64,000 bases of DNA, from positions 1,302,001 to 1,366,000 of the forward strand of contig OX337236.1 of NCBI GenBank assembly GCA_946965045.2. The letters run 5' to 3'. Below, piece after piece: positions 40,393-64,000 of this stretch (positions within the stretch are counted from its first letter, which is position 1; each line of letters begins with the position of its first letter). The notes under the pieces were generated by a model that was not told the origin of the DNA, did no database searches, and worked only from the letters and a program-made list of their open reading frames with translations. This DNA comes from Epithemia pelagica (taxonomy: Eukaryota; Protista; Bacillariophyta). Made by a program: the position numbers and the translations under genes.

Positions 40393-40577
40393 TGCAATGT
40401 GAAACATGCTCTAATGCGAGACGTGCGCAGACCTGCGCCTCAGACATGCGCAGACCTGCACCTCGAACATGCGCAGACCTGCACTTCAGACATGCGTCAA
40501 ACCCGTATCACGTCTCACACTTCACTTTAGACCTAAGCTCATAATGTTATCATCGACATCTTTAGCAAGCTACTGCA
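40393..40577 (+). repeat. 5' LTR (185 bp)
   Basis: TG..CA ends, three internal 23-bp GCGCAGACCTGC..ACAT units. Followed by TTCTGATCAGAGC, which partly resembles the tRNAi-Met PBS TGGTATCAGAGC. Confidence 0.93.
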
Positions 40578-42356: not shown

Positions 42357-43238
42357 TGCAGTAGCTTGCTAAAGATGTCGATGATAACATTATGAGCTTA
42401 GGTCTAAAGTGAAGTGTGAGACGTGATACGGGTTTGACGCATGTCTGAAGTGCAGGTCTGCGCATGTTCGAGGTGCAGGTCTGCGCATGTCTGAGGCGCA
42501 GGTCTGCGCACGTCTCGCATTAGAGCATGTTTCACATTGCATTCTGCCTCTCAAGGTGGCACGATGTGGAAAACAGAGGGGAACCTTGTCGAGTAGGATA
42601 AAAACCCTCAGCACAGAGTTAGCGATGGTAGGGCTTCACTCTGCGTATGGAAATGCGCTCAATGGTCGTAGCATTGAGTCGGATGGTGACTTTTCCATTA
42701 GTATGGACTGATTCTACGCGGTAGGGTCCATCCGCACGAGCCTCAAGTTTGCTCGGTTTGTAGCGAAGTTTCAAAACTTCATCACCAATGTGATAATCAT
42801 AGGCAAACCATTTGCGGTTAGCGGCAATCAACCTTGTGTCGATAAGTTGTTGTCTCCTCTCACGAAGGAGGAGGTGTAAGTCAGCAATGACAGGGATATC
42901 AAGAATCATATCTCGATGAAAGGCCAGGGCACCTGGGGTTGTTTGCAATGTGCCATGAACTGCTGAACGAGCAGCAAAGAGAACATTTGCTAGAGCAGTG
43001 TCCAACAACTGAGTTGCTGTGGCTATCCCATCAGGGGGATTCATGGTTGTAAGAGCGCGGAGGCTATTACCAACTGCTTGGTGCATGCGTTCACAAATTG
43101 CATTGGCCTGGGGATTTTTGGAAGAAATTGGATGGCCTTTGATGCCATGTCTCTGCAAGAGACGTTGAAAATGGTAGCCTGTAAATTCTCCTCCTTGATC
43201 ATAGATGCAATGGAGTGGCCTTGGATAGCGTGATAGCC
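42357..43238 (-). repeat. Inverted 882-bp copy of the element's 3' end (full LTR 42357-42541, 3' UTR, integrase C-terminal part)
   Basis: Reverse complement of 45319-46182 plus the 18 bp missing from the 3' LTR. ORF 42619..43245(-) duplicates the last about 200 aa of pol. Confidence 0.95.
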
Positions 43239-46015: not shown

Positions 46016-46182
46016 TGCAATGTGAAACATGCTCTAATGCGAGACGTGCGCAGACCAGACCTGCACCTCGAACATGCGCAGACCTGCACTTCAGACATGC
46101 GTCAAACCCGTATCACGTCTCACACTTCACTTTAGACCTAAGCTCATAATGTTATCATCGACATCTTTAGCAAGCTACTGCA
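46016..46182 (+). repeat. 3' LTR (167 bp; 18-bp deletion relative to the other two LTR copies)
   Basis: Lacks TGCGCCTCAGACATGCGC within the 23-bp repeat region. Preceded by purine-rich GAGAGGCAGAA. Confidence 0.93.
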
Positions 46183-49496: not shown

Positions 49497-49556
49497 TGAG
49501 AGATAGCACAACTATGTTTGGCTAGGTGTTAGTGACATAGCTGCTACTCTCACTAG

Positions 49557-50183
49557 TGCCGCGCCGGGTGAGGCGGCCAAAACCTCGAAAATAGCGGCCA
49601 AATGACCATGATGGACATCTAGCGTAACTCACTCAATATAGGACGCCCATGCCCCAATATCGAGCGACGTCTTCTTCAAACAATGCTCTCGGCCCCTGCG
49701 GGCCACTTTTGCTATAGCGGCCATGGTTATCGAGTTCTAACTCACCATTGTAGGGTCATTTTTTTTTGTCCACGTAATGGCCGCTAGATTGCCCTTTGGC
49801 CGCTACATTGATGGTACTATAAGTCGACCACTACGTGCCCTACCATCAAATGGTGCCTACGATGTGTCTATCGTAGTGTAAGGAAGAGCACTTTCAGGTC
49901 ATATGGGCTATCGGTGGGCGTGATAGCGCAAACAAACCCCTGCTCGATTTGGCTCGTTTTTGTTGGAACGAGATTTTCATCCGTAACTCGATGTACTGCC
50001 GAAGCTCCAATATGGTAGTTCTACAGTTCATACTTGAAGGGCTTTTACTTTAGGGTCTACCTTCGTGAAACCAACTATCATAACTATCGTAGGTGCCATG
50101 GTTATCGCAAAATAGTCGTCCATCGATGAGAATTTTCATCTCTCGCGACACGAACCACAATCGATCCTCATCGTCAGTTTCCG
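49557..50183 (+). repeat. Left long terminal inverted repeat (unique part)
   Basis: Reverse complement of about 63247-63875, with a few substitutions and small indels. Confidence 0.95.
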
Positions 50184-52030
50184 CTACTCGTCTCGTTCAA
50201 TCTTGATTCTCTGCCCCTCCTACTTTGTAGCATTTTAGTTTAGGACCTACTTGAGCGTAACGAGGTATCAGATTGACCGTAGGCGCCATGGTCATTGAGA
50301 ATGGGCCATCCATTGATGGAGGCATTTTTCTCGATGTAGCACGTAGCACACAACATTTCGAGACCGAAGGACGTTGCTAATCGTCTCGTTCAATATTGAC
50401 TCGCTTGCCTTCCTACTTTGTAGCATTTTAGTTTAGAACCTACTTGAGCGTAACGAGGTATCAGATTGACCGTAGGCGCCATGGTCATTGAGAAGGTGCC
50501 ATCCATTGATGGAGGCAATTTTCTCGATGTAGCACGTAGCACACAACATTTCGAGACCGAAGGACGTTGCTACTCGTCTCGTTCAATATTGACTCGCTTG
50601 CCTTCCTACTTTGTAGCATTTTAGTTTAGGACATACTTGAGCGTAACGAGGTATCAGATTGACCGTAGGTGCCATGGTCATTGAGAATGGGCCATCCATT
50701 GATGGAGGCATTTTTCTCGATGTAGCACGTAGCACACAACATTTCGAGACCGAAGGACGTTGCTAATCGTCTCGTTCAAAATTGACTCGCTTGCCCTCCT
50801 ACTTTGTAGCATTTTAGTTTAGGACATACTTGAGCGTACCCAAGTCTCAGATTGACCGTAGGCGCCATGGTTATTGAGAAGGTGCCATCCATTGATGGAG
50901 GCATTTTTCCCGATGTAGCACGTAGCACACAACATTTCGAGACCGAAGGACGTTGCTAATCGTCTCGTTTAATATTGACTCGCTTGCCTTCCTACTTTGT
51001 AGCTTTTTAGTTTAGAATTTACTTGAGCGTACCCAAGTCTCAGATTGACCGTAGGCGCCATGGTTATTGAGAATGGGCCATCCATTGATGGAGGCATTTT
51101 TCCCGATGTAGCACGTAGCACACAACATTTCGAGACCGAAGGACGTTGCTACTCGTCTCGTTCCATATTGACTCTCTGCCCCTCCTACTTTGTCGCGTTT
51201 TAGTTTAGAACCTACTTGAGCGTAACGAGGTATCAGATTGACCGTAGGCGCCATGGTCATTGAGAAGGTGCCATCCATTGATGGAGGCATTTTTCTCGAT
51301 GTAGCACGTCGCACACAACATTTCGAGACCGAAGGACGTTACTACTCGTCTCGTTCAATATTGACTCGCTTGCCTTCCTACTTTGTAGCATTTTAGTTTA
51401 GAACCTACTTGAGCGTAACGAGGTATCAGATTGACCGTAGGCGCCATGGTCATTGAGAAGGTGCCATCCATTGATGGAGGCATTTTTCCCGATGTAGCAC
51501 GTAGCACACAACATTTCGAGACCGAAGGACGTTGCTAATCGTCTCGTTCAAAATTGACTCGCTGCCCCTCCTGCTTTGTAGCATTTTAGTTTAGAACCTA
51601 CTTGAGCGTAACGAGGTATCAGATTGACCGTAGGCGCCATGGTCATTGAGAATGGGCCATCCATTGATGGAGGCATTTTTCCCGATGTAGCACGTAGCAC
51701 ACAACATTTCGAGACCGAAGGACGTTGCTACTCGTCTCGTTCCATATTGACTCTCTGCCCCTCCTACTTTGTAGCATTTTAGTTTAGAACCTACTTGATC
51801 GTAACGAGGTATCAGATTGACCGTAGGCGCCATGGTCATTGAGAAGGTGCCATCCATTGATGGAGGCATTTTTTTCTCGATGTAGCACGTTGCACACAAC
51901 ATTTCGAGACCGAAGGACGTTGCGATTTGCTCCTTCAATTTGGACTCGCTGCCCCTCCTACTTTGTAGCATTTTAGTTTAGGACATACTTGAGCGTACCC
52001 AGGTCTCAGATTGACCGTAGGTGCCATGGT
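50184..52030 (-). repeat. Left subterminal tandem array, 193-bp unit, about 9.6 copies
   Basis: Marker CATTTCGAGACCGAAGG recurs at 50354, 50547, 50740 ... 51900 (period 193; last interval 195). Confidence 0.95.
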
Positions 52031-52195
52031 GTTTATTATCCTAGTAGCGACCATCAACGGAAGTGGTGTTTCCATTTGGTAGTTTGCCCTTTGAATCCGT
52101 AAGTTTCTATGACTTCTGTATGACTTCTGAGTGATGATTCAAGGAAGTTGAAGAATAGTCAATGCTATTTTGATTTATATCTAGTTCAACGTTGT

Positions 52196-52717
52196 TTAGG
52201 ACTGCATGTAGTTGTCGTAAAGATTCTCGCAGTCATCTTGTTGGGTCTCGGCAAAGTCGAAAGAAAGATCGCTATCAACAGCAGTTCCACGGGAGGATAC
52301 AGTCTGAGCACTACGCATCGAGATGCTGCTCATGATTGAGAAACGTGATGCAGGCTTTTCGATCTCCTCGTTGACTGGGCTAAGGTCGTCGGCAAACTTG
52401 ATTTTCAGGTGGCGTACTGGAGTCTTGTCTCCACCATTCAATCCTTCTTCCTCTAAATTGTCGCGAATCTTGGTGATTGATTCTTGAACGGTTCCAAGAA
52501 CAACTACGGTTTTGTCCCCACATTCTTGATCCAATCCTTCCGAGAGCAATTCTGCCTTTCCAATGGTTGCTGTCTCTGCCTTGATTTTTGTTTTCTTGAG
52601 GGCACCTTGTTCAGTTGGGCGCACGGCAGATTTTGACACACTGGTTCGAACAACACTTGTGTGTGTGCGGTTTTGAAGGCGCGCACTAACACGGCGCTTG
52701 TCGATATAGAGTGACAT
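52196..52717 (-). CDS. Unknown ORF inside the piggyBac-like element
   Basis: 173-codon ATG-initiated ORF, S/T/K/E-rich; no family recognised. Confidence 0.4.
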   Translation of the reverse strand: MSLYIDKRRVSARLQNRTHTSVVRTSVSKSAVRPTEQGALKKTKIKAETATIGKAELLSEGLDQECGDKTVVVLGTVQESITKIRDNLEEEGLNGGDKTPVRHLKIKFADDLSPVNEEIEKPASRFSIMSSISMRSAQTVSSRGTAVDSDLSFDFAETQQDDCENLYDNYMQS

Positions 52718-53195
52718 TGTGTTGTTGCTTTTGTTGTTGTAGTTGCAGTTGTTCTTGATGTGTTTCTCGTTGACGCCGTTTTATGAAGGTCGCTGTCGGC
52801 TCTGTCTCTCGTTGATGTTTGATTGATGTGACGTCTCACCATAAAATCGGATCTCGTATGGGAAGCCGGCTTGCGGCTCAACGCTCAACGGAAGAAAATT
52901 TTCTTAAGTAACTTGTCACACTTTCGTAATTGCTCCCGAGTGGCAATAGTAGGAAGTCCCCAACCGTTCCCCCAAATCAAATGAAGTTTACTACATGTCG
53001 TCTGAGAAATCGATTTTACGACGTAAGAGCTTTTCCGAAGGAGAGGAGAGAATCGATAGGCCACCTGAATGAAGTGCTCACCTGAGGAAAGAGCTTTTGT
53101 TTGCAAATCAAAACGAGCGTAGAAGTAAGTGGTTCCGCGGCATCTTAATCATTGCTTACAATGGTGGCAATAACCTCGACTCATTGATTCTCTCT

Positions 53196-53756
53196 ATGCT
53201 TAGGACGGATCGAAGTACAATGTCCGAACACGAGAATGAATCGCGCAATCGGATTCTCCTTCCTAACGGCTTTCACCTCGTACAAGATACGGGGAGCAAC
53301 ATCGAGCTCCAAGGAAGCCGCTTAACCATCTACGGTGAAGCGGGTGTGAACGTACACCTTCAAGACGCCACTCTCGGGGAGAAAGGAGAAAAGGGGACAC
53401 TTGTTGTGGATCGAGGCGTGATTCTTTTACAGCGCTCCAGGTATGGTACCAACGGTGGAATGCTATCAATTTGCGCGTTTGGCCGTGACAAGAAGGACGA
53501 TTCGATGCCTGACATCGTCATCCCAGTCGGATCGGTTCACAACAAAATTCGCTCCAAGAAGTTCCGTTCCAAAAATGGGTCCCTTGTCAAAGGAGAACTC
53601 ACCATTGAGACCTCTCACTCCTTGGATACCAAGGTGACAATGGGACCCATGATCATTACTGTGCGAATGAGTCTTACTGGGATGAATGCATTCATGTCGC
53701 TCTATGACAAAGCAACGGAGACGTGGCCCAACCAGGAAAGTGTTAAAATCACGTAA
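53196..53756 (+). CDS. Unknown beta-rich ORF inside the piggyBac-like element
   Basis: Part of ORF 53097..53756, with first ATGs near 53196 and 53220. Alternating hydrophobic pattern ending in a likely helix; no confident family. Confidence 0.5.
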   Translation: MLRTDRSTMSEHENESRNRILLPNGFHLVQDTGSNIELQGSRLTIYGEAGVNVHLQDATLGEKGEKGTLVVDRGVILLQRSRYGTNGGMLSICAFGRDKKDDSMPDIVIPVGSVHNKIRSKKFRSKNGSLVKGELTIETSHSLDTKVTMGPMIITVRMSLTGMNAFMSLYDKATETWPNQESVKIT

Positions 53757-53871
53757 GCGGGTAACAAATGATAGTTAGTATTCTTATTCATGGTGGTTTC
53801 CTAATTTCATAATATGTAGAGAGGCGCAAACATGTAGAATGAGTGTAGTTCTTGTGCACACAGAAGTTTCA

Positions 53872-56800
53872 TTAAGTCGCATTTCCTCCTTTCGCCGCAG
53901 CAAAGTTCATGGCGTGCTGCTCGATACAAGTTCGTTGTTTCCCATATCGAATGCCCACAGATGGCTTGCACACTGGTGTTCCCACGTAGGTTATCGAGCG
54001 CCAAGTCTTGGTGAACATGCGGCATTGTGGATGGCCACACATGGCTCGCGTGTCATTCTTACAAATAACACATTTACGCTTCATGCCTCTTTGGTCTGAT
54101 GAAGAAACGTTGTCCTGTTCAACAACGCTGTGACAAACGACCGAATCAATTGTAAGCTCAGAAAATACGGACGCGGGTGATATACTGCTTGAACAGGTAT
54201 GGCCAACACTTGATGGCACAGTTACGGAGGCATCCGTACACACCGAAAGGTTGTTTGTCACTGGCAAGCTTTCAAGCACACCCGCTCTTCGTTCAACTGA
54301 ACTGCGTTCGGAATATGGATTGTTGATTAAGTCATAAGCCAGCATATCCGCAAAGTCGTGGATTGAGGTATTCAGGAAAGGTTCCACTTGCATGTGAAAA
54401 CGCAGTGCAAGATAACAATCAACCACCGTCATACCGAAGACTGTCGTCACAATCCGAAACCACCGATTTTTAGTTAACCATAGTTCTTCGAGGCGTAGAA
54501 GACCCTGACGGATGTGATTGTGCCGGTCAATTGCATTGGCGTGCCGAAAGTATTTTGAAATACAGTCGGGACGCTCGACTCTCCGCTGCTTGATATTTCC
54601 AAACACATCTGTGAAGCGAGCAATGTATGGTGCGCCCGGTTGAGTATGCCCGGCATCTTTGGTCATGACAAAGAGAAGAACCTTCCTTGTATTGTACTTG
54701 TACCCAACCGCTACGAGCTTCACTCCAGTGACAGGGGCAGTACACTCCATGACAAGGTAGGCTCCGGATGGAAAAGACTTCATCTGCTTCTCGATCTGTT
54801 TCTTGGGAAACCATGAGTGCGCTGTCTTCACAGCACCAATGAACTCATGTCCATCCGTGTTCAGCCCTTTCTCTTTGTCCACGTAGAACGGAAAGGAAGT
54901 GCGATTGCGTCGATCGTCCTGTTCCCTCCACGAACACTTGAGGCATTCAGCGACCTGGACACTTCCAAACCAGGAGTCGCCTAAATACAGGTAGCGCTTG
55001 GAGGCCTTTCCAGCTTCGTGGCGTGCGCTTGACAGCTGTCCACTGTATTGTGAACCTTCGACAAGCCGCAGTGTGCAGCCGCCCGATGGACCAGACTTCG
55101 CGACAAACTTCTTACGCCGCATTGGGACTCTTCCTTCTTGGATTTCAAGATGGGTCAGACACCCTGTCGTGGTGTCGGCGACCACCTGTGAATGAAATAA
55201 GGTAGTAAGGTCAGACACATTAAGTCTTCAAAACATTGTCTGTCTGGTGTTAGCTTACCTTGAACTCCGTCCCAAGAGGTTTGGGCTTGCGGGCAATAAA
55301 TGAGATATGCGGCAACAAAGATTGCTTGGTCGTTCGTGGTCGAAACGCACTCATCGACTCGTCAAGCACTTGAACCACGGACGACGCAATTATTTGTCGG
55401 CGGTTCTCATTGAACCTATCAATCAGGGGACGGATTTCATTCCATTTGTCATTCGGATCCGTCCCCCTGAAGGCATGATAGAGATGCGTCTTAATGTCGT
55501 TGAACCTACTCTCTGCCATGATGTTTTCGCCTTTCGTTCCAAAATTTACATGTGGTGATAACCGACGAGTGCTAGGATCCTGGAAAAGAGCCTTTCCTCC
55601 TACACCAAGGGGACTTGCCGCGACGATAATCCCCCAAACTTTCCACCACTCGCCTTCCGTAACCATTCGAATTTTCTTCTTTGTATCACGCTTTTGATTC
55701 AATCGATCTAAACTAAGATTAAGGACTCTCAACTGATTTTGCCAGTTCCCTGTACAGAGGCCGATTGCAAGAAAGTGAGACTGTTGAACTTCTGCGATGT
55801 AGAAACAAAGAGTAGTGCTGACTTACCTGGCCAGAAGTGCATCAACAAGTCAAGAAATGGAAAGGAGTATTTTTCATTCTCGTGGCTTATTTCACTTTTA
55901 CTCATCCTTTTGCCGAAGTTGTAGCCAACGATTGCATTCTTCTCATAGTCCGACACTTGATGATCCGGCGATGAATCCTCGACTATCTTCCACTCAAATC
56001 TTCTTTTGTCCTCTTTCCTTCGTAGCTGTTGACCCGTTAAATCGGTCGTTGGCTCACTCTCTCCGTCAAAAAGCACAGTCCATAGGTTTCCTTTTGCCAC
56101 TGGATTCTTCTTCCCGTCGACAACTGTTCCCCATTGAGCATTGTTGCCATTCTTGTGAACTCGATCTCCAATGTCGATTCCTTTTTTCTTGGGAGGCTTG
56201 ACGACTACGGTCCAGTTGCTTTCAATAAGATGGTCTTTGGTAAGCTTGTATTGCTCCATTTTATGCCTGTGACGATCTTCGTCTCTTTCAACCAAAGCCC
56301 CGAAAGCCAATTGGCGTGCTTGTGCTTGTTCTTGTTCAGCTCCGTCATCCTCGTCATCATAGACAAGTTCCACGGGTACATCTTCTTCGAGTTCTTCATC
56401 GGCAGCTGCATCTTCATCCTGATCTTCATGTTCGTTGTCACTATCTTCATCATCATTTTGCCTGGTCGTTGGTGGGTTGTTCTGATTGTTCGGAGGTGCA
56501 TCTTGACCTTGAGCGTTGTCCAGGATCGCCGCTTGTGCCAAAACTTCAATTTCTTCATCGTCGCTTACATCTGTTAATATCACTCCACCAACAGTGCGAG
56601 GAGCCTCTGAAGTCGTTGTCGTTGCTGCGGTCGTTGCAGTGGTCGTTGCAGTGGTCGTTGCCGTGGTCGTTGGTGCAGCAGTCGTTGTCATTACCGATTG
56701 CATTGGTGTGGTTGTTCCTGCTGTCGATGCCGCTGCCGTCGGCCTTGCTGTCGTCTCGACTGGGGTGTTCGTTGTCGTTGTCGCGCTCGTTGTCGCGCTC

Positions 56801-57207
56801 GTTGTCGCGCTCGTTGTCGCGCTCGTTGTCGTTGTCGTGGTTGCCGTTGGCATTGACGTGGATGTTGCTGTCCTCGATGCCGTTGTCATTGTCCTTGCTA
56901 CGGTTTCGGCTGGAACTGGAGTATTTGATACTGTGGTTGTTGTTGAGATCGTAGGTCGAGGTCCGGTTGCTGCAACTGGATCTGGTTGTCCAGGAAAACC
57001 TTCATCTTGCTTGGGGAATCGAAGCTGTGGGGAAGAGCGTTCATTTCTTAGCTCTGTTAGATTTCCTCTTTCGTCCACTCCAGCGACCATCCACTTATGA
57101 AATTCGACTGCTTCAACAATAATGCATGGGATGTCTCCACGCCTCATGAAACATCTCGATCCAATCCCCAAACCACATGATTTAGGCCTCGGCGGCAGTG
57201 GTTCCAT
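53872..57207 (-). CDS. piggyBac-like (DDE_Tnp_1_7/PGBD-type) transposase, 3 exons, 1061 aa, apparently intact
   Basis: Exons 57207-55827, 55749-55259 and 55185-53872 sum to 3186 nt. GT-AG introns 55826-55750 and 55258-55186 give joins FWP-GNWQNQL and GTEFK|VVADTTTG. Catalytic triad VLDES / LGDSWF / AIDRHN, plus RKPKPLG and a C-terminal Cys-rich CVIC..C...C tail. Confidence 0.9.
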
Positions 57208-57645
57208 TGCTGTATCGTTCTCGTGCGTTTTGGTCTTCTCAAGTTTCTAAGAGGTTATTGAGAATTGCTGTTTGTGTGTCCAATCTCCATTAGCGGTCAA
57301 AAGCAACTTTTCGACTTGCAAGCAAGCACATGGTTGATTGTTGAATGAACTGTGGAACGATGTTGGAGGGAAGATGTAGTTTTTGTGGAGCAGTCGCTAC
57401 AAAAGCGCGTGTTCCGCATGCCCGCCCGCCTTAATTAAACGACAAGAATGTTCTAAACATAATGAAATATGTAACAAAATTTAACGTTTTAACCGTATTC
57501 CCGTTGAATCGAAAGATTTTTTCCAAGTGTGGTCTGATTTGTTTTTTTGTCAAGTGGTCTGCAGACCAGGCAATGACGAACGCTCTCTGTCTGAGAAACG
57601 CTTGAAAACCCAAGACTCTCTGAGAAACCCCTACTCTACAAAAAG

Positions 57646-60426
57646 ATGGAGAGGAGAACAATGAAAACACGAAGTCAATCTGAATCGCGTCTCAAGGCGC
57701 TTGCTCATGTTGCAGTTGCTGCCTCGGAGGCGGAGTCGGAGCCACATTCACCATCACCTATGGCAGCAGCAGACGAAGCAACAATGGCAGCAACAGAAGA
57801 AGCGAGAGCAAGCCATCGGTTTCTTACAGACGAAGACCTCCATAAAGTCAACGAGAAAAAGCATGCAGACAGTCGTCGCGGCAAGCTAAAGGACGACAAT
57901 GCATACACGGACTCGGCGTCGGCTTTGAAACAGCGCCTCAGCGAGCAACGGAAAAAGGATTATGCGGAGGCTGTCGCTGCAGTAAAGAAAGTCAAGGCCC
58001 ATGGACGGGATCCATGGGACAATTTCATCCGAGGACTGAAGTTTCTGTCCACTTCGATCAAGGATGGCACTGTGCTGATCAACGCATACGGAGTGTTTGT
58101 GGCAAAGAAGATTGGCGTCACATTTTCGGTGACAGATGCGCCCATTCGCAAATCAGGCACAGGCATCAAGAACTCTAATACGGCCCCCAAGAAAAATGAC
58201 TACGGACTGGAAGTTGGGGAAGTTGTGCCCAAGTCCGTTGGGATTGGGATCCCAACCAAGCAAACTCGAAACAACTCGTGCCTCAAGTTTCGACAGTTCA
58301 GCTTCTCCCTCAAGAATGATCCGATCTTCAAGATTATGCTGGGGACAAAACACATCTTCACAGTCAAGAAGTCGGGCCTCAAGGCTGAAGAGGGAAAAGA
58401 AGGCCCCGGGTTTGGTCTTTTTTCTGTACAAGAGCACAAAGTAGGTGAGGTGATTGGTGTGTATGCAGGGTTGGATATCACCTCTCGGACCGTCGGTCGG
58501 ACCGAGTACGCAATTCAGTTTGGAGAGCACGGAGAACGCATCGTTCAAGCCGACAACGAGGATTTCTTTTTCATGGGGTTTCATTTGATGAATGATCCCC
58601 AGTATCACCTCTACGATACAGAAGAAGGACCTGACGAAGCACACCAGGACTACAACGTGCGTATCGACAAGAATCTGCTAGTTCGTGTGATCAAGGACAT
58701 CGCGGAGGGGGACGAGCTGTTTTTATTCTACAACCTTAGCTCGGACACCAAGACGATCGCAGCCTCAAAGGAAGGCGGTGAGGAGCCTGATGAGGATGTG
58801 CAGAAGAAGCGAGGTCGATCCAGCCAGGATGATTCTCCGAAGAAGGTGAAGAAGATGAAGATGGGTGGTTCTGGTGGTAATGCTCCTGCTCCTGATGTTG
58901 CCATTCAACAGCACTACCAACCGCACGACCTTCAACTGCACCATCCTGTTCCCGCCGCTGCTGCTCCTGATGTTGCCATTCAACAGCACTACCAACCGCA
59001 CGACCTTCAACTGCACCATCCTGTTCCCGCTGCTGCTGTTCCTCATGATGTTGCCACTCAACAGCACTACCAACCGCACGACCTTCAACTGCACCATCCT
59101 GTTCCCGCCGCTGCTGCTCCTGATGTTGCCATTCAACAGCACTACCAACCGCACGACCTTCAACTGCACCATCCTGTTCCCGTCGCTGCTGTTCCTCATG
59201 ATGTTGCCACTCAACAGCACCACTACAATTCTCCGCAAATACACCACCTTCAACCACACCATCATCCTCAGTACCACAGTCCACCATACCATCATCCTCC
59301 ACATTCCCACTACACGCCCGGGCATTTCTATGATGAGCATCATCGGCCCCATGTCTTGGTGGCTCAGGGGCAGCTCCCTTATGAAGGATACGGGCAGGTT
59401 CAGCCACAACCAAGCATTCCATATGACGCCCCGATACTCAATGAAAACCCCAGTCCGGAGGACTCTCACCAGGTGGAAGCGGTTGAGGAGGAACCAAATC
59501 CGGCAGAGAAAGCAAAAGAACTGAATAAAAACTATGGCCACTTGTTGATCAATTATGAGGGTGATCCACGAGGACGTTTTTTGGTCGCTCCGACAGAGCT
59601 TCTTGGATTGTTGCGTGATGTCTGGTCTCTCGGAACGGAGAAGCATGGGGACGACAAGATTTCGAAGAGAATGCGGGGTGTGCAACAATACACCCCACAA
59701 ATCCAAATGCGCATGTTTGACGGTGAAGGATTAGTGGCACATGACGAATTCACACCCTGGGGGAAGAAGCGGGTAGCTGAAATTGTGGCAACATTCAAGA
59801 AGACTCTTGCTCAAGCCCTTGTGGACATGGAGTACGCAGAGGATGACTCCTTTGCTGAAGGTATCCAGATCCACCTGTCGCTCCTCAAGACCACATTTGA
59901 AAAGGTGCAAGAGCCACATCTGGATTTCAAATGGGATGTGGTCACGCCAAGTCCGGACGAGGAACAGGGTTCGACTGAACAGAAAGGGACACCCCAAGGC
60001 AACGTCAAGACTCGTGGAAAGGGACGAAAAAAAGCGCCGTTCCGAGAACGTGTCCCATTTGCTGTTTTTGTGCCCCTGACGGAGGACGGAATGACTTTAG
60101 AATTGTGGCGGCACCGCAAGGACCACAAGAAGAATAGGCATCAGTTGGGTGAGGTGGTCGACGTTCCCTATGGAACGTTCCTCATGATGCAAGGCAATAC
60201 TGTTCACGCCGGAGGCTTCTTGACCAGTGCCCAAGGCAATCCACGTGCCCATTTCTACATGTATCAAGGGCGTGATCAAACCATTCATCCATATCTTCCC
60301 AAAAACGAGTACCAGTTACCACCCTACTACAACTCAGAAGATCGTCTCGCAACATATTACCGGCACAGTCAGCATGTCCACTATAAATCTCCAAAGAAAG
60401 TTCGTGGCGCACTTCTTCTAAAATAA
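57646..60426 (+). CDS. Cargo protein: SET domain + His/Gln-rich repeat + 2OG-Fe(II) dioxygenase-like domain
   Basis: SET at about 58351-58734: TVKKSG..GPGFGLF..GEVIGVYAG..YAI..FHLMNDP..YNV..VRVIKDIAEGDELFLFYN. Dioxygenase-like: QEPHLDF (H 59917, D 59923), AVFVPL, VDVPYGTFLMMQGNTVHAGG (H 60205), GNPRAHFY (R 60244). Confidence 0.8.
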   Translation: MERRTMKTRSQSESRLKALAHVAVAASEAESEPHSPSPMAAADEATMAATEEARASHRFLTDEDLHKVNEKKHADSRRGKLKDDNAYTDSASALKQRLSEQRKKDYAEAVAAVKKVKAHGRDPWDNFIRGLKFLSTSIKDGTVLINAYGVFVAKKIGVTFSVTDAPIRKSGTGIKNSNTAPKKNDYGLEVGEVVPKSVGIGIPTKQTRNNSCLKFRQFSFSLKNDPIFKIMLGTKHIFTVKKSGLKAEEGKEGPGFGLFSVQEHKVGEVIGVYAGLDITSRTVGRTEYAIQFGEHGERIVQADNEDFFFMGFHLMNDPQYHLYDTEEGPDEAHQDYNVRIDKNLLVRVIKDIAEGDELFLFYNLSSDTKTIAASKEGGEEPDEDVQKKRGRSSQDDSPKKVKKMKMGGSGGNAPAPDVAIQQHYQPHDLQLHHPVPAAAAPDVAIQQHYQPHDLQLHHPVPAAAVPHDVATQQHYQPHDLQLHHPVPAAAAPDVAIQQHYQPHDLQLHHPVPVAAVPHDVATQQHHYNSPQIHHLQPHHHPQYHSPPYHHPPHSHYTPGHFYDEHHRPHVLVAQGQLPYEGYGQVQPQPSIPYDAPILNENPSPEDSHQVEAVEEEPNPAEKAKELNKNYGHLLINYEGDPRGRFLVAPTELLGLLRDVWSLGTEKHGDDKISKRMRGVQQYTPQIQMRMFDGEGLVAHDEFTPWGKKRVAEIVATFKKTLAQALVDMEYAEDDSFAEGIQIHLSLLKTTFEKVQEPHLDFKWDVVTPSPDEEQGSTEQKGTPQGNVKTRGKGRKKAPFRERVPFAVFVPLTEDGMTLELWRHRKDHKKNRHQLGEVVDVPYGTFLMMQGNTVHAGGFLTSAQGNPRAHFYMYQGRDQTIHPYLPKNEYQLPPYYNSEDRLATYYRHSQHVHYKSPKKVRGALLLK
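58885..59225 (+). repeat. Coding minisatellite (75/78-bp units, about 4.4 copies) in the SET gene
   Basis: PDVAIQQHYQPHDLQLHHPVPAAAA-type unit, arranged as a 153-bp dimer repeated twice. Confidence 0.92.
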
Positions 60427-60582
60427 AAAACTATAAGTTTATGCTTGCGTGATAGACTTTCGTCTGTTGTTGTAATCCATGACCTCCCCAATTCCATTTC
60501 TCGTCTCAATCGTCCCCTGTCTCCGACATCTTCAGACAACACTTAAAAATTGATTTGAAGCTTGCCCAATCTCGTGTGCTTT

Positions 60583-63246
60583 GTGCTACATCGGGAAAAA
60601 TGCCTCCATCAATGGATGGCCCATTCTCAATGACCATGGCGCCTACGGTCAATCTGAGACCTGGGTACACTCAGGTAGGTCCTAACCTAAAAAGCTACAA
60701 AGTAGGAAGGTAAGCGAGTCAATATGGAACGAGACGAGTAGCAACGTCCTTCGGTCTCGAAATGTTGTGTGCTACGTGCTACATCGAGAAAAATGCCTCC
60801 ATCAATGGATGGCACCTTCTCAATAACCATGGCGCCTACGGTCAATCTGAGACCTGGGTACGCTCAGGTAGGTCCTAACCTAAAATGCTACTAAGTAGGA
60901 GGGGCAGCGAGTCAATATTGAACGAGACGAGTAGCAACGTCCTTCGGTCTCGAAATGTTGTGTGCTACGTGCTACATCGAGAAAAATGCCTCCATCAATG
61001 GATGGCCCATTCTCAATGACCATGGCGCCTACGGTCATTCTGACACTTGGGTACGCTCAAGTAGGTTCTAAACTAAAATGCTACAAAGTAGGAAGGCAAG
61101 CGAGTCAATATTAAACGAGACGAGTAGCAACGTCCTTCGGTCTCGAAATGTTGTGTGCTACGTGCTACATCGGGAAAAATGCCTCCATCAATGGATGGCA
61201 CCTTCTCAATAACCATGGCGCCTACGGTCAATCTGAGACTTGGGTACGCTCAAGTAGATTCTAAACTAAAATGCGACAAAGTAGGAGGGGCAGAGAGTCA
61301 ATATGGAACGAGACAAGTAGCAACGTCCTTCGGTCTCGAAATGTTGTGTGCTACGTGCTACATCGAGAAAAATGCCTCTATCAATGGATGGCACCTTCTC
61401 AATGACCATGGCGCCTACGGTCAATCTGATACCTCGTTACGCTCAAGTAGGTTCTAAACTAAAAAGCTACAAAGTAGGAAGGTAAGCGAGTCAATATTGA
61501 ACGAGACGAGTAGCAACGTCCTTCGGTCTCGAAATGTTGTGTGCTACGTGCTACATCGAGAAAAATGCCTCCATCAATGGATGGCCCATTCTCAATGACC
61601 ATGGCGCCTACGGTCAATCTGAGACTTGGGTACGCTCAACTAGGTTCTAAACTAAAATGCTACAAAGTAGGAAGGCAAGCGAGTCAATATTAAACGAGAC
61701 GAGTAGCAACGTCCTTCGGTCTCGAAATGTTGTGTGCTATGTGCTACATCGGGAAAAATGCCTCCATCAATGGATGGCACCTTCTCAATAACCATGGCGC
61801 CTACGGTCAATCTGAGACTTGGGTACGCTCAAGTAGATGCTAAACTAAAATGCGACAAAGTAGGAGGGGCAGAGAGTCAATATGGAACGAGACAAGTAGC
61901 AACGTCCTTCGGTCTCGAAATGTTGTGTGCTACGTGCTACATCGAGAAAAATGCCTCTATCAATGGATGGCACCTTCTCAATGACCATGGCGCCTACGGT
62001 CAATCTGATACCTCGTTACGCTCAAGTAGGTTCTAAACTAAAATGCTACAAAGCAGGAAGGTAAGCGAGTCAATATTGAACGAGACGAGTAGCAACGTCC
62101 TTCGGTCTCGAAATGTTGTGTGCTACGTGCTACATCGAGAAAAATGCCTCCATCAATGGATGGCCCATTCTCAATGACCATGGCGCCTACGGTCAATCTG
62201 AGACTTGGGTACGCTCAACTAGGTTCTAAACTAAAATGCTACAAAGTAGGAAGGCAAGCGAGTCAATATTAAACGAGACGAGTAGCAACGTCCTTCGGTC
62301 TCGAAATGTTGTGTGCTACGTGCTACATCGGGAAAAATGCCTCCATCAATGGATGGCACCTTCTCAATGACCATGGCGCCTACGGTCAATCTGAGACTTG
62401 GGTACGCTCAAGTAGGTTCTAAACTAAAATGCTACAAAGTAGGAAGGCAAGCGAGTCAATATTAAACGAGACGAGTAGCAACGTCCTTCGGTCTCGAAAT
62501 GTTGTGTGCTACGTACTACATCGAGAAAAATGCCTCCATCAATGGATGGCACCTTCTCAATGACCATGGCGCCTACGGTCAATCTGATACCTCGTTACGC
62601 TCAAGTAGGTTCTAAACTAAAATGCTACAAAGCAGGAGGGGCAGCGAGTCAATTTTGAACGAGACGATTAGCAACGTCCTTCGGTCTCGAAATGTTGTGT
62701 GCTACGTGCTACATCGAGAAAAATGCTTCCATCAATGGATGGCCCATTCTCAATGACCATGGCGCCTACGGTCAATCTGAGACTTGGGTACGCTCAAGTA
62801 GGTTCTAAACTAAAATGCGACAAAGTAGGAGGGGCAGAGAGTCAATATGGAACGAGACGAGTAGCAACGTCCTTCGGTCTCGAAATGTTGTGTGCTACGT
62901 GCTACATCGAGAAAAATGCCTCCATCAATGGATGGCACCTTCTCAATGACCATGGCGCCTACGGTCAATCTGATACCTCGTTACGCTCAAGTAGGTTCTA
63001 AACTAAAATGCTACAAAGTAGGAAGGCAAGCGAGTCAATATTGAACGAGACGAGTAGCAACGTCCTTCGGTCTCGAAATGTTGTGTGCTACGTGCTACAT
63101 CGAGAAAAATGCCTCCATCAATGGATGGCCCATTCTCAATGACCATGGCGCCTACGGTCAATCTGAGACTTGGGTACGCTCAAGTAGGTTCTAAACTAAA
63201 ATGCTACAAAGTAGGAGGGGCAGAGAATCAAGATTGAACGAGAGTA
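60583..63246 (+). repeat. Right subterminal tandem array, 193-bp unit, about 13.8 copies, inverted relative to the left array
   Basis: Marker CCTTCGGTCTCGAAATG recurs every 193 bp from 60748 to 63064 (13 copies) plus partial units. Confidence 0.95.
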
Positions 63247-63875
63247 GCGGAAACTGACGATGAGGATCGATTGTGGTTCGTGTCGCGAGAGATGAAAATC
63301 CTCATCGATGGACGACTATTTTGCGATAACCGTGGCACCTACGATAGTTATGATAGTTGGTTTCACGAAGGTAGACCCTAAAGTAAAAGCCCTTCAAGTA
63401 TGAACTGTAGAACTACCATATTGGAGCTTCGGCAGTACATCGAGTTACGGATGAAAATCTCGTTCCAACAAAAACGAGCCAAATCGAGCAGGGGTTTGTT
63501 TGCGCTATCACGCCCACCGATAGCCCATATGACCTGAAAGTGCTCTTCCTTACACTACAATAGACACATCGTAGGCACCATTTGATGGTAGGGCACGTAG
63601 TGGTCGACTTATAGTACCATCAATGTAGCGGCCAAAGGGCAATCTAGCGGCCATTACGTGGACAAAAAAAAAATGACCCTACAATGGTGAGTTAGAACTC
63701 GATAACCATGGCCGCTATAGCAAAAGTGGCCCGCAGGGGCCGAGAGCATTGTTTGAAGAAGACGTCGCTCGATATTGGGGCATGGGCGTCCTATATTGAG
63801 TGAGTTACGCTAGATGTCCATCATGGTCATTTGGCCGCTATTTTCGAGGTTTTGGCCGCCTCACCCGGCGCGGCA
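63247..63875 (-). repeat. Right long terminal inverted repeat (unique part)
   Basis: Reverse complement of 49557-50183. Confidence 0.95.
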
Positions 63876-64000
63876 CTAGAGAACGTGGGGAGATGTTTCG
63901 TGGGTTGGTTCGTTGGGCGTGATTCTGACGTGGAACAGCGTGGTGAAATGGTTTTTATTTAATGGATTGATAAAACAATGGATGACCGTTCTTCGATCAT

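What the first reader, a model, noticed from the sequence alone, without database searches (positions are those of the whole stretch)
50184..63246. Inverted 193-bp satellite arrays form the arms of the transposon
About 9.6 units on the left and about 13.8 on the right, in opposite orientation, extend the TIR into 2.5-kb and 3.3-kb arms, like Foldback/Galileo-type elements. The units are CpG-rich and contain a short palindrome (CCATC-CATT-GATGG). The 193-bp length is close to one nucleosome repeat. Inference: the arrays could phase nucleosomes, bind transposase or the cargo protein, produce hairpin dsRNA/siRNA, or seed new satellite or centromere-like DNA.
Basis: partly seen in the sequence, partly recalled or inferred. 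Interest (0 to 1): 0.75.

Follow-up and report, generated by a model that had tools for sequence, protein, structure and literature searches.

The report
Repeat-built arms of a piggyBac transposon
The two inverted 193-bp repeat arrays are real and are built-in, evolutionarily conserved end-pieces of a recently active 14.3-kb piggyBac-type jumping gene, not a free satellite; their unit number changes quickly, their sequence changes slowly, and their function is untested.

Summary
The left array is 50183-52030 (9.6 units). The right array is 60574-63243 (13.8 units, inverted). With about 630 bp of unique inverted repeat outside each, they form arms of 2,478 and 3,306 bp.

Genome-wide, the unit occurs only in the arms of five copies of this element, plus one deleted derivative and one solo unit. 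There is no free array, so the stated refutation test fails.

Sister subfamilies carry homologous 190- and 188-bp arrays in the same place. In one of them a true unit lies where this family keeps only a decayed "unit 0", so the arrays predate the split.

Unit number varies from 3 to 14 per arm, while the unique inverted repeats are 98-99% identical between copies. Edge units are fixed and multi-unit blocks have recently duplicated in place.

The unit consensus is 69% identical between families, against 48% at four-fold degenerate sites, so the sequence is constrained.

My best reading is a platform of extra binding sites for the transposase or an accessory protein, as shown for Galileo. That step is inferred.

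The nucleosome, palindrome, hairpin-RNA and satellite-seeding ideas gained no support. The unit is only mildly CpG-rich.

The scan had already noted these repeat-built ends on other copies of this family.

The parts
49553..49556 (.). Left 4-bp target-site duplication (CTAG)
   Evidence: The 4-mers flanking the ends are direct repeats that differ between copies: CTAG/CTAG (C9, C1), ATAG/ATAG (C8), CTAT/CTAT (C11). They are therefore target duplications, not part of the element.
49557..50182 (+). Left unique part of the terminal inverted repeat (starts TGCCGCGCC). It holds five copies of the 7-mer GCGGCCA (three direct, two inverted) in the outer ~260 bp.
   Evidence: 99% match to the right end. 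(98.4-99.4% identical to the ends of the other four copies). (outer ~257 bp 74-75% identical to the sister family, with the GCGGCCA words kept).
50027..50159 (+). Decayed 'unit 0': a degenerate, in-register copy of the repeat unit just outside the array
   Evidence: 64% identity to unit positions 35-168 over 135 nt, E 2e-10; it aligns with the first true unit of the 190-bp family.
50183..52030 (+). Left (transposase-side) array, 9.6 units of 193 bp
   Evidence: The outermost and innermost units are conserved in all copies. 'A-type' unit variants are enriched on this side.
52196..52717 (-). Conserved accessory coding region next to the left array (173-aa ORF; strand and gene model uncertain)
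   Evidence: 52% amino-acid identity to the sister family. tblastx also gives plus-strand frames with equal or better identity, so the strand is not settled.
53220..53756 (+). Orphan accessory gene (178 aa from Met42 of the 219-aa ORF), the best conserved protein of the element
   Evidence: 75% amino-acid identity between families, dN/dS 0.19. No Pfam hit. AlphaFold2 model unusable, pLDDT 35.
53872..57207 (-). piggyBac-type transposase gene in three consecutive ORFs (55729-57207, 55250-55732, 53872-55218) with a Cys-rich C-terminus. The splits are conserved in the sister family, so they are probably short introns. The ORFs were not joined.
   Evidence: PF13843 DDE_Tnp_1_7, E 2.5e-9. (relatives carry PF13843). 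(sequence). (63-70% amino-acid identity to the sister family, dN/dS ~0.2).
57646..60426 (+). 926-aa cargo ORF with a weak SET-domain match. Its stop codon lies 147 bp before the right array.
   Evidence: dN/dS ~0.3 against the sister family.
60574..63243 (-). Right (cargo-side) array, 13.8 units of 193 bp, inverted relative to the left array
   Evidence: 'C-type' unit variants are enriched on this side.
60928..62278 (-). Recent higher-order duplication inside the right array: units 6-8 repeated as units 9-11, then unit 12 (579-bp period)
   Evidence: units 6/9 differ at 0 positions, 7/10 at 2, 8/11 at 2. The typical difference between units of one arm is about 10.
63244..63875 (-). Right unique part of the terminal inverted repeat
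63876..63879 (.). Right 4-bp target-site duplication (CTAG)

Best explanation
What it is (shown): the two arrays are the subterminal parts of the inverted ends of a 14.3-kb cut-and-paste transposon of the piggyBac superfamily. Each arm is about 630 bp of unique end sequence, then a decayed unit, then 3-14 tandem units of 193 bp. The arrays move with the element. They are inherited side by side, each side keeping its own mix of unit variants. They have been kept since before this family split from its 190/188-bp sisters.

Two processes act on them:
- Fast turnover of unit number, by unequal exchange, slippage or repeat mis-alignment during repair. This spares the fixed edge units and duplicates blocks of 1-4 units in place.
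- Purifying selection on the unit sequence.

How it most likely works (inferred): the units offer many extra binding sites for the element's own transposase, through its Cys-rich C-terminal domain, or for one of its accessory proteins. That would raise local protein concentration and specificity and help the two ends pair. The same has been shown by footprinting for the repeat-built ends of Galileo.
For: Intrinsic and mobile:
- The unit is found only as inverted pairs about 10 kb apart at five loci, plus two fragments.
- The arrays lie inside 4-bp target duplications that differ between copies.
- The unique ends differ between copies by 1-15 mismatches in about 630 bp.
- Three copies have an uninterrupted transposase ORF.

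Old:
- The 193-, 190- and 188-bp units align over their whole length with only 2-3 small indels.
- The decayed unit 0 of this family aligns with the first true unit of the 190 family.
- All 13 elements of the clade found by search (transposase at least 63% identical) have such arrays in the same orientation to their ends.

Constrained:
- Unit consensus identity between families is 69%, and the outer end sequence is 74-75%.
- End positions 264-454 are 25-53% identical.
- Pooled four-fold degenerate sites of the element's genes are 48% identical (n=453), with dS 0.74-1.5.

Dynamic:
- Unit counts per arm are 10/14, 12/8, 3/10, 4/3 and 5/3.
- Identical or near-identical units lie 1-3 units apart within one arm.
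- Outermost and innermost units are conserved.
- Unit variants are side-specific: 32:8 against 9:23, Fisher p 1e-5.

Link to end sequences: 193-bp units share 11 8-mers with the unique end sequence, against 2.8 +/- 2.0 for shuffled units. Each 190-bp unit holds an exact copy of the subterminal word GCGGCCA.

Precedent: the Galileo THAP domain binds sites in the tandem repeats of its long ends (PMC3688188), and Galileo repeat number also varies between arms (PMC3573991).
Against: - No binding, footprint or transposition data exist.
- The word shared between units and end sequence differs between the 193 and 190 families, and the enrichment is weak in the 190 family (6 against 2.6 +/- 2.1). No single conserved site can be named.
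- Unit number varies four-fold among seemingly competent copies, so no particular number is required.
- Units are not independent samples, because of shared descent and duplication. The Fisher test overstates significance.
- Comparing consensus sequences slightly lowers apparent divergence.
- Only one genome could be examined.
Confidence: 0.55

Rival explanations
1. Neutral passenger. The arrays arose once by duplication of a subterminal segment and persist only because tandem repeats breed more repeats and piggyBac tolerates large size. They do nothing for the element.
For: - Unit number varies from 3 to 14 per arm among copies.
- The two copies with stop codons in the transposase carry the shortest arrays, as expected from deletion bias.
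- A 1.08-kb derivative keeps under one unit per arm.
Against: - The unit sequence is far better conserved between families (69%) than four-fold sites (48%) or the neighbouring end segment 264-454 (25-53%).
- No arm that could be examined has lost its array: 10 arms of the 193 family and the arms of the sister families seen.
- Period and phase of the array edges are kept.
Confidence: 0.22
2. Chromatin device. The nucleosome-sized units position nucleosomes or recruit a chromatin state, possibly through the element's own SET-type cargo, or yield small RNAs. This would shield the element from silencing or mark it for silencing.
For: - The period is kept at 188-193 bp over deep divergence.
- CpG is not depleted in the arms.
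- The arms could pair over at least 1.7 kb at 94%.
- Other notes of this scan report 176-bp and other arrays inside unrelated transposons of the same genome (unchecked lead).
Against: - There is no 10-bp WW periodicity in the unit.
- A single unit does not fold better than shuffles, z -1.2 and -0.75, and there is no Rfam match.
- On the ORF strands, the flanking genes point outward, so read-through gives same-sense RNA from both arms (inference).
- No chromatin, methylation or small-RNA data are at hand.
Confidence: 0.13
3. Gene-regulatory end-pieces. The inner ends of the arrays serve as terminators, or as a promoter, for the outermost genes and buffer them from flanking chromosomal transcription.
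For: - The cargo ORF stops 147 bp before the right array, and the leftmost conserved coding region lies 166 bp from the left array.
- tblastx suggests a possible plus-strand multi-exon gene starting right at the left array.
Against: - One or two units would be enough, so this does not explain tandem repetition or the symmetry of the two arms.
- No transcript data exist.
Confidence: 0.08
4. Assembly artefact or ordinary chromosomal satellite that happens to flank the element.
For: None found. Read-level data could not be inspected.
Against: - Five loci on five contigs show the same layout, each with its own order of unit variants.
- The arrays lie inside the target duplications.
- No hit lies outside the elements.
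Confidence: 0.02

Closest known systems
Galileo (P superfamily, Drosophila) with long, internally repetitive inverted ends
   Same: - Autonomous cut-and-paste element whose ends are lengthened by direct tandem repeats of about 210 bp.
- Repeat number differs between copies and between the two arms of one copy.
- The repeats hold secondary transposase-binding sites (PMC3573991, PMC3688188).
   Different: - Different superfamily: P/THAP against piggyBac DDE_Tnp_1_7.
- Galileo has 0-3 repeats and ends up to about 1.3 kb. Here there are 3-14 units and arms up to 3.3 kb.
- This element carries three extra conserved genes.
- Binding is shown for Galileo but not here.
Tetris / Foldback elements of Drosophila
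   Same: Foldback layout with about 220-bp tandem repeats inside the inverted ends (PMC4079207).
   Different: - Tetris is non-autonomous, and its TIR-220 repeats have escaped to form kb-size satellite arrays.
- Here the element is autonomous and no free array exists in the genome.
Canonical piggyBac elements
   Same: Transposase of the DDE_Tnp_1_7 family with a Cys-rich C-terminus, and a 4-bp target duplication.
   Different: - piggyBac elements generally have 12-19-bp inverted ends and TTAA duplications (PMC2872659).
- This one has about 630 bp of unique inverted end plus kb arrays, ends in TGCC...GGCA, and duplicates CTAG, ATAG or CTAT.
Subterminal repeat motifs of Ac/Ds, En/Spm (CACTA) and P elements
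   Same: Many short protein-binding motifs in the subterminal regions. Here GCGGCCA occurs five times in the outer 260 bp. The comparison itself rests on my own knowledge of those families.
   Different: Those motifs are 6-12 bp and scattered over 100-300 bp. They are not 190-bp units in long regular tandem arrays.

Membership tests
piggyBac superfamily | Transposase with the DDE_Tnp_1_7 (PF13843) catalytic domain | tested here: met
   PF13843, E 2.5e-9, 37.3 bits (cut-off 22.4) on ORF 55250-55732; relatives of ORF 53872-55218 carry PF13843. ORF 53872-55218 itself gives no direct Pfam hit.
piggyBac superfamily | TTAA target-site duplication | tested here: not met
   the duplication is 4 bp, but it reads CTAG, ATAG or CTAT.
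piggyBac superfamily | Short (12-19 bp) terminal inverted repeats with a CC[C/T]T terminus (PMC2872659) | tested here: not met
   about 630 bp of unique inverted end plus arrays, with terminus TGCCGCGCC.
piggyBac superfamily | C-terminal Cys-rich DNA-binding domain | tested here: inconclusive
   a Cys/His-rich tail is visible in the last ~60 residues of ORF 53872-55218. No profile or structure test was done.
Foldback-like elements (structural class) | Long inverted ends made largely of tandem sub-repeats, with arm length variable between copies | tested here: met
Foldback-like elements (structural class) | Arms make up most of the element, with little or no coding middle | tested here: not met
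   The arms are 40% of 14,327 bp. The 8.5-kb middle holds four conserved coding regions.
Satellite DNA | Long arrays at chromosomal sites of their own, independent of a mobile element | tested here: not met
   about 72 units (some 14 kb in 60.5 Mb), all in transposon arms apart from one solo unit.
Galileo-type multi-site ends (functional analogy) | Transposase binds sites inside the tandem repeats | not testable with these tools
   Only indirect evidence: sequence constraint and words shared with the end sequence.

The most novel reading that the evidence does not exclude
The ~190-bp units are a selected, nucleosome-length landing pad that the element's own proteins (the SET-type cargo enzyme or the orphan 178-aa protein) read or write. 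The transposon would then carry both a chromatin enzyme and its cis target and set its own chromatin state. This would be a self-contained epigenetic module of a kind not described for DNA transposons.
Probability: 0.08. Interest if true: 0.85.

Novelty: new variant of a known kind. Interest (0 to 1): 0.5.

Why it matters
Repeat-built foldback ends are known in the P, Mutator and Foldback groups. The literature searches run here found no piggyBac-type element with kilobase arms made of about 190-bp tandem units.

The useful new point is evolutionary. The arrays are very unstable in unit number, yet their unit sequence and period are conserved beyond the synonymous rate across three subfamilies. 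That argues they are a working part of the element rather than debris.

This gives a clean test system. There are five young copies carrying 3-14 units per arm. They can be used to ask what long repetitive transposon ends do, and whether extra binding sites improve end recognition.

The result also shows that, in this genome, a "satellite-like" repeat of about 14 kb in total is entirely transposon-borne.

Tried and rejected
1. Palindrome as key feature: rejected. A 5-bp stem is expected by chance. The larger 45-nt dyad is significant only in the 193 family and is not kept in the 190/188 units.
2. Intrinsic nucleosome-positioning signal: no 10-bp WW periodicity. I found no paper with nucleosome spacing for this group.
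3. Structured RNA: no Rfam match at E up to 1. A unit folds no better than shuffles on either strand.
4. Strong CpG excess or methylation-driven decay: CpG observed/expected is only 1.02-1.09. CpG sites carry only slightly more variants than other sites, 15 per 24 sites against 75 per 169.
5. Relatives outside this genome:
   - Two metagenome scans with unit patterns found nothing.
As a result, the third subfamily on contig C1 and the ~20 more distant piggyBac copies could not be read, and I cannot say whether the distant ones carry unrelated arrays.
6. Function of the orphan accessory protein:
   - No Pfam hit.
   - Only five close relatives.
   - The AlphaFold2 model has pLDDT 35 and is unusable.
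   - The protein atlas gave no usable hit.
7. A single shared binding word between units and end sequence: the shared words differ between families, so no site is named.
I recomputed the consensus from files instead.
9. The organism was not identified here. Other notes of the scan call it a diatom. The transposase exons were not joined.
Full report
**1. Observation**

Tandem Repeats Finder reports a 193-bp period at 50183-52030 (9.6 copies) and at 60574-63243 (13.8 copies). Both arrays show 93% matches and no indels. The inverted-repeat scan pairs the two arrays at 92-95% complementarity over up to 1,694 nt, in many registers. It also finds a further, non-repetitive inverted repeat outside them, at 49550-50189 and 63242-63882, 99-100% complementary.

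The arms are therefore 2,478 bp and 3,306 bp, which is 40% of a 14,327-bp unit. Laying the arrays out in 193-nt rows shows clean register throughout.

**2. What the element is**

Between the arms lie the following coding regions:
- On the minus strand, three consecutive ORFs: 55729-57207, 55250-55732 and 53872-55218. The middle one matches the piggyBac transposase family PF13843 (E 2.5e-9). The last ends in a Cys/His-rich tail. Database relatives of the last ORF carry PF13843.
- A 926-aa ORF at 57646-60426 with a weak SET match, on the plus strand.
- Two further conserved coding regions next to the left arm.

The ORF splits in the transposase recur in the sister family, so they are probably introns.

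The 4-mers flanking the ends are direct repeats that differ between copies: CTAG (contigs C9 and C1), ATAG (C8) and CTAT (C11). This is a 4-bp target duplication that is not TTAA, and the element proper ends in TGCC...GGCA.

**3.

The window is C9:1302001-1366000 of a 60.5-Mb, 23-contig assembly.
- A two-unit query finds matches of 87-100% identity only as inverted pairs about 10 kb apart on C9, C1, C8, C13 and C11, plus small pieces on C16 and C17.
- A 27-nt core of the unit, allowed three mismatches, hits 68 times. Of these, 67 hits lie in the arms of the five elements and one in the C17 piece. The reversed control hits 0 times.
- C17 is a 1.08-kb internally deleted derivative with both ends and less than one unit per arm. 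C16 is a solo unit of about 210 bp.

There is no free array. The roughly 72 units in the genome (about 14 kb) are all transposon-borne, so the unit has not seeded a satellite in this genome.

**4. Fast turnover of unit number**

Unit counts per arm are as follows:

| Copy | Left arm | Right arm |
|---|---|---|
| C9 | 10 | 14 |
| C1 | 12 | 8 |
| C8 | 3 | 10 |
| C13 | 4 | 3 |
| C11 | 5 | 3 |

Meanwhile the unique ends of different copies differ at only 1-15 of about 630 positions.

- The outermost unit has its own signature in nine of ten arms. The innermost, partial unit and its junction with the interior are specific to each side and identical in all copies. Gains and losses therefore happen inside the arrays.
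- Some neighbours are identical or nearly so at a lag of one or three units. In the right arm of this copy, units 6/9, 7/10 and 8/11 differ at 0, 2 and 2 positions. C1_L units 4/7 and C13_L units 2/3 differ at 0. The typical difference between units is about 10. These are recent multi-unit duplications in place.
- Other units have their nearest relative in another copy, so much of the variant diversity (5-7%) is older than the copies.
- The two sides keep different variant mixes in all copies. The transposase side has 32 A-type to 8 C-type units. The cargo side has 9 to 23. Units are not independent samples, so the Fisher p of 1e-5 is only indicative.
- The left and right unique ends of one copy share copy-specific variants, four of them in C11. 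This requires exchange between arms at some point in each lineage.
- The two copies whose transposase carries stop codons (C13 and C11) have the shortest arrays. With five copies this is an anecdote.

**5. The arrays are old**

Other elements in the genome carry arrays with 190- and 188-bp periods. These units align with the 193-bp unit over their full length, with two or three small indels. Identity to the 193-bp consensus is 69% for the 190-bp unit and 58-64% for the 188-bp units.

They too occur only as inverted pairs around a transposase that is 63-66% identical to this one:
- on C3, C2 (twice), C5 and C18;
- as a third subfamily at three sites on C1 between 643 and 713 kb.

The last 135 nt of the "unique" end in this family form a decayed unit, in register, 64% identical to the unit. 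This decayed unit aligns with the first true unit of the 190 family. Tandem units at this position therefore predate the split of the families.

About 20 more distant piggyBac copies (48-53% amino-acid identity) have no hit of these units near them. I could not read their flanks, so they may carry unrelated arrays.

**6. The unit sequence is constrained**

Comparison of the 193 and 190 families gives these identities:

| Compared region | Identity |
|---|---|
| Pooled four-fold degenerate sites of transposase, orphan gene and cargo (n=453; dS 0.74-1.5) | 48% |
| End positions 264-454 | 25-53% |
| Unit consensus | 69% |
| Outer 257 bp of the end | 74-75% |

All four genes are under purifying selection, with dN/dS between 0.19 and 0.36.

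By Jukes-Cantor distance (my own calculation from these identities, not a tool run), the units diverge at roughly 45% of the four-fold-site rate. The conserved positions form short blocks spread over the unit. The 5' third of the unit is the variable part both within and between families.

Two caveats apply. Consensus sequences hide copy-specific changes. Only one genome contributes.

**7.

- *Palindrome.* It is present in 21 units, but a 5-bp stem is expected by chance. It belongs to a 45-nt dyad that stands out in the 193 family (z -4.4) and is not kept in the 190/188 units (z -1.4 to -2.3, with different pairings). It is probably not the conserved function.
- *Nucleosomes.* The period of 188-193 bp is conserved, but the unit has no 10-bp WW periodicity. 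I found no measured nucleosome spacing for this group.
- *RNA.* There is no Rfam match. Single-unit folds are no better than shuffles.
- *Hairpin RNA.* If the leftmost coding region is read on the minus strand of its ORF, the two outermost genes point outward. Read-through would then give the same repeat strand from both arms, and a hairpin would need one transcript across the whole 14 kb. This is an inference from the ORF strands. The strand of the leftmost gene is not settled.
- *CpG.* Observed/expected is 1.02-1.09, against 0.87 for the window.

**8. Link to the end sequence**

The outer 260 bp hold five copies of GCGGCCA, three direct and two inverted. These are kept in the sister family. 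I estimate about 0.03 such copies by chance in 240 bp on both strands; this is my arithmetic, not a tool run.

The 193-bp unit shares 11 8-mers with the unique end sequence, against 2.8 +/- 2.0 for shuffled units. The shared words cluster at unit positions 103-110, 129-132 and 148-152. The 190-bp unit shares fewer (6 against 2.6 +/- 2.1) but holds an exact GCGGCCA. The shared words differ between families, so I name no binding site.

**9. Mechanism**

Shown:
- The arrays are inherited, side-specific parts of the mobile unit.
- They are old.
- Their sequence is constrained.
- Their unit number is unstable.

Inferred:
- They act in cis as a platform of extra binding sites for the transposase or an accessory protein. 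This would aid end recognition and pairing. It has been shown by footprinting for the THAP domain of Galileo on the tandem repeats of its long ends (PMC3688188), and Galileo repeat number also differs between arms (PMC3573991).
- Unit number changes through unequal exchange, slippage or mis-aligned repair. This is inferred from the pattern in section 4.

Rivals:
- a neutral passenger;
- a chromatin or small-RNA device;
- terminator or promoter pieces for the outermost genes;
- an assembly artefact, which is very unlikely because five loci each show their own order of unit variants.

**10. Comparison and novelty**

The closest known systems are Galileo and Tetris/Foldback. Tetris has 220-bp units in its ends, and those units did escape to form satellites (PMC4079207).

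piggyBac elements are described as having 12-19-bp inverted ends and TTAA duplications (PMC2872659). This element meets the transposase criterion but fails both end criteria. Four literature searches found no piggyBac-type element with such arms. I class it as a new variant of a known kind.

Other reports of this scan had already noted the repeat-built ends on other copies of the family. This report adds the distribution, turnover, age and constraint of the arrays. The same notes mention arrays of 176 bp and other sizes inside unrelated transposons of this genome. That is an unchecked lead that could point to a host-level cause.

**11. Limits**

- Two metagenome scans found nothing.
- The orphan protein could not be modelled or placed.
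- The organism was not identified here.

Noticed in passing
window 49553-49556 and 63876-63879; also L001/L002, L003/L004, L007/L008: The 4-bp target duplication is CTAG in two copies, ATAG in one and CTAT in one. The non-palindromic cases are direct repeats. This shows a true duplication with consensus (C/A)TA(G/T) rather than TTAA.
   Followed up: partly
window 53220-53756 (+): An orphan 178-aa protein is the best conserved gene of the element (75% amino-acid identity between families, dN/dS 0.19). It has only five close relatives in the big protein collection, no Pfam hit and no usable fold model.
   Followed up: partly
window 52221-53756: tblastx against the sister family gives a chain of plus-strand frames (about 52221-52481, 52595-52753, 52876-52977, 53043-53129, 53211-53747). 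Their identity equals or exceeds that of the minus-strand 173-aa ORF. The orphan gene may therefore be multi-exon and start right at the inner edge of the left array.
   Followed up: no
L010:4997-6076 (C17:1755997-1757076): A 1.08-kb internally deleted, MITE-like derivative of the element. Both ends are present (82-89% identity) and less than one repeat unit per arm remains.
   Followed up: partly
L009:4874-5084 (C16:2092874-2093084): A solo repeat unit of about 210 bp. It is 92% identical to the innermost left unit and has no end sequence beside it.
   Followed up: no
window 58882-59220: A coding tandem repeat of 75/153 bp inside the SET-type cargo ORF gives 4.4 copies of a Pro/His/Gln-rich 25-residue motif. 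It is present in four of the five copies.
   Followed up: no
window 56618-56838: 6- and 12-bp microsatellites lie inside the first transposase ORF and encode long Thr/Ala runs.
   Followed up: no
G000:C1:643898-713351: Three copies of a third subfamily (units 80-83% identical to the 190-bp unit) are clustered within 70 kb. The first appears to be interrupted by a more distant piggyBac at 658153-659088. The sequence could not be fetched.
   Followed up: no
L013 and L014 (C2:3833954-3846792), L019 and L020 (C18): In the sister family each arm is composite: an outer 190-bp array followed inward by a 188-bp array of a diverged unit type.
   Followed up: partly
window 40419-40496, 42438-42515, 46056-46101: Short 23-bp tandem repeats recur in both orientations inside the region that another note calls a gypsy element.
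   Followed up: no
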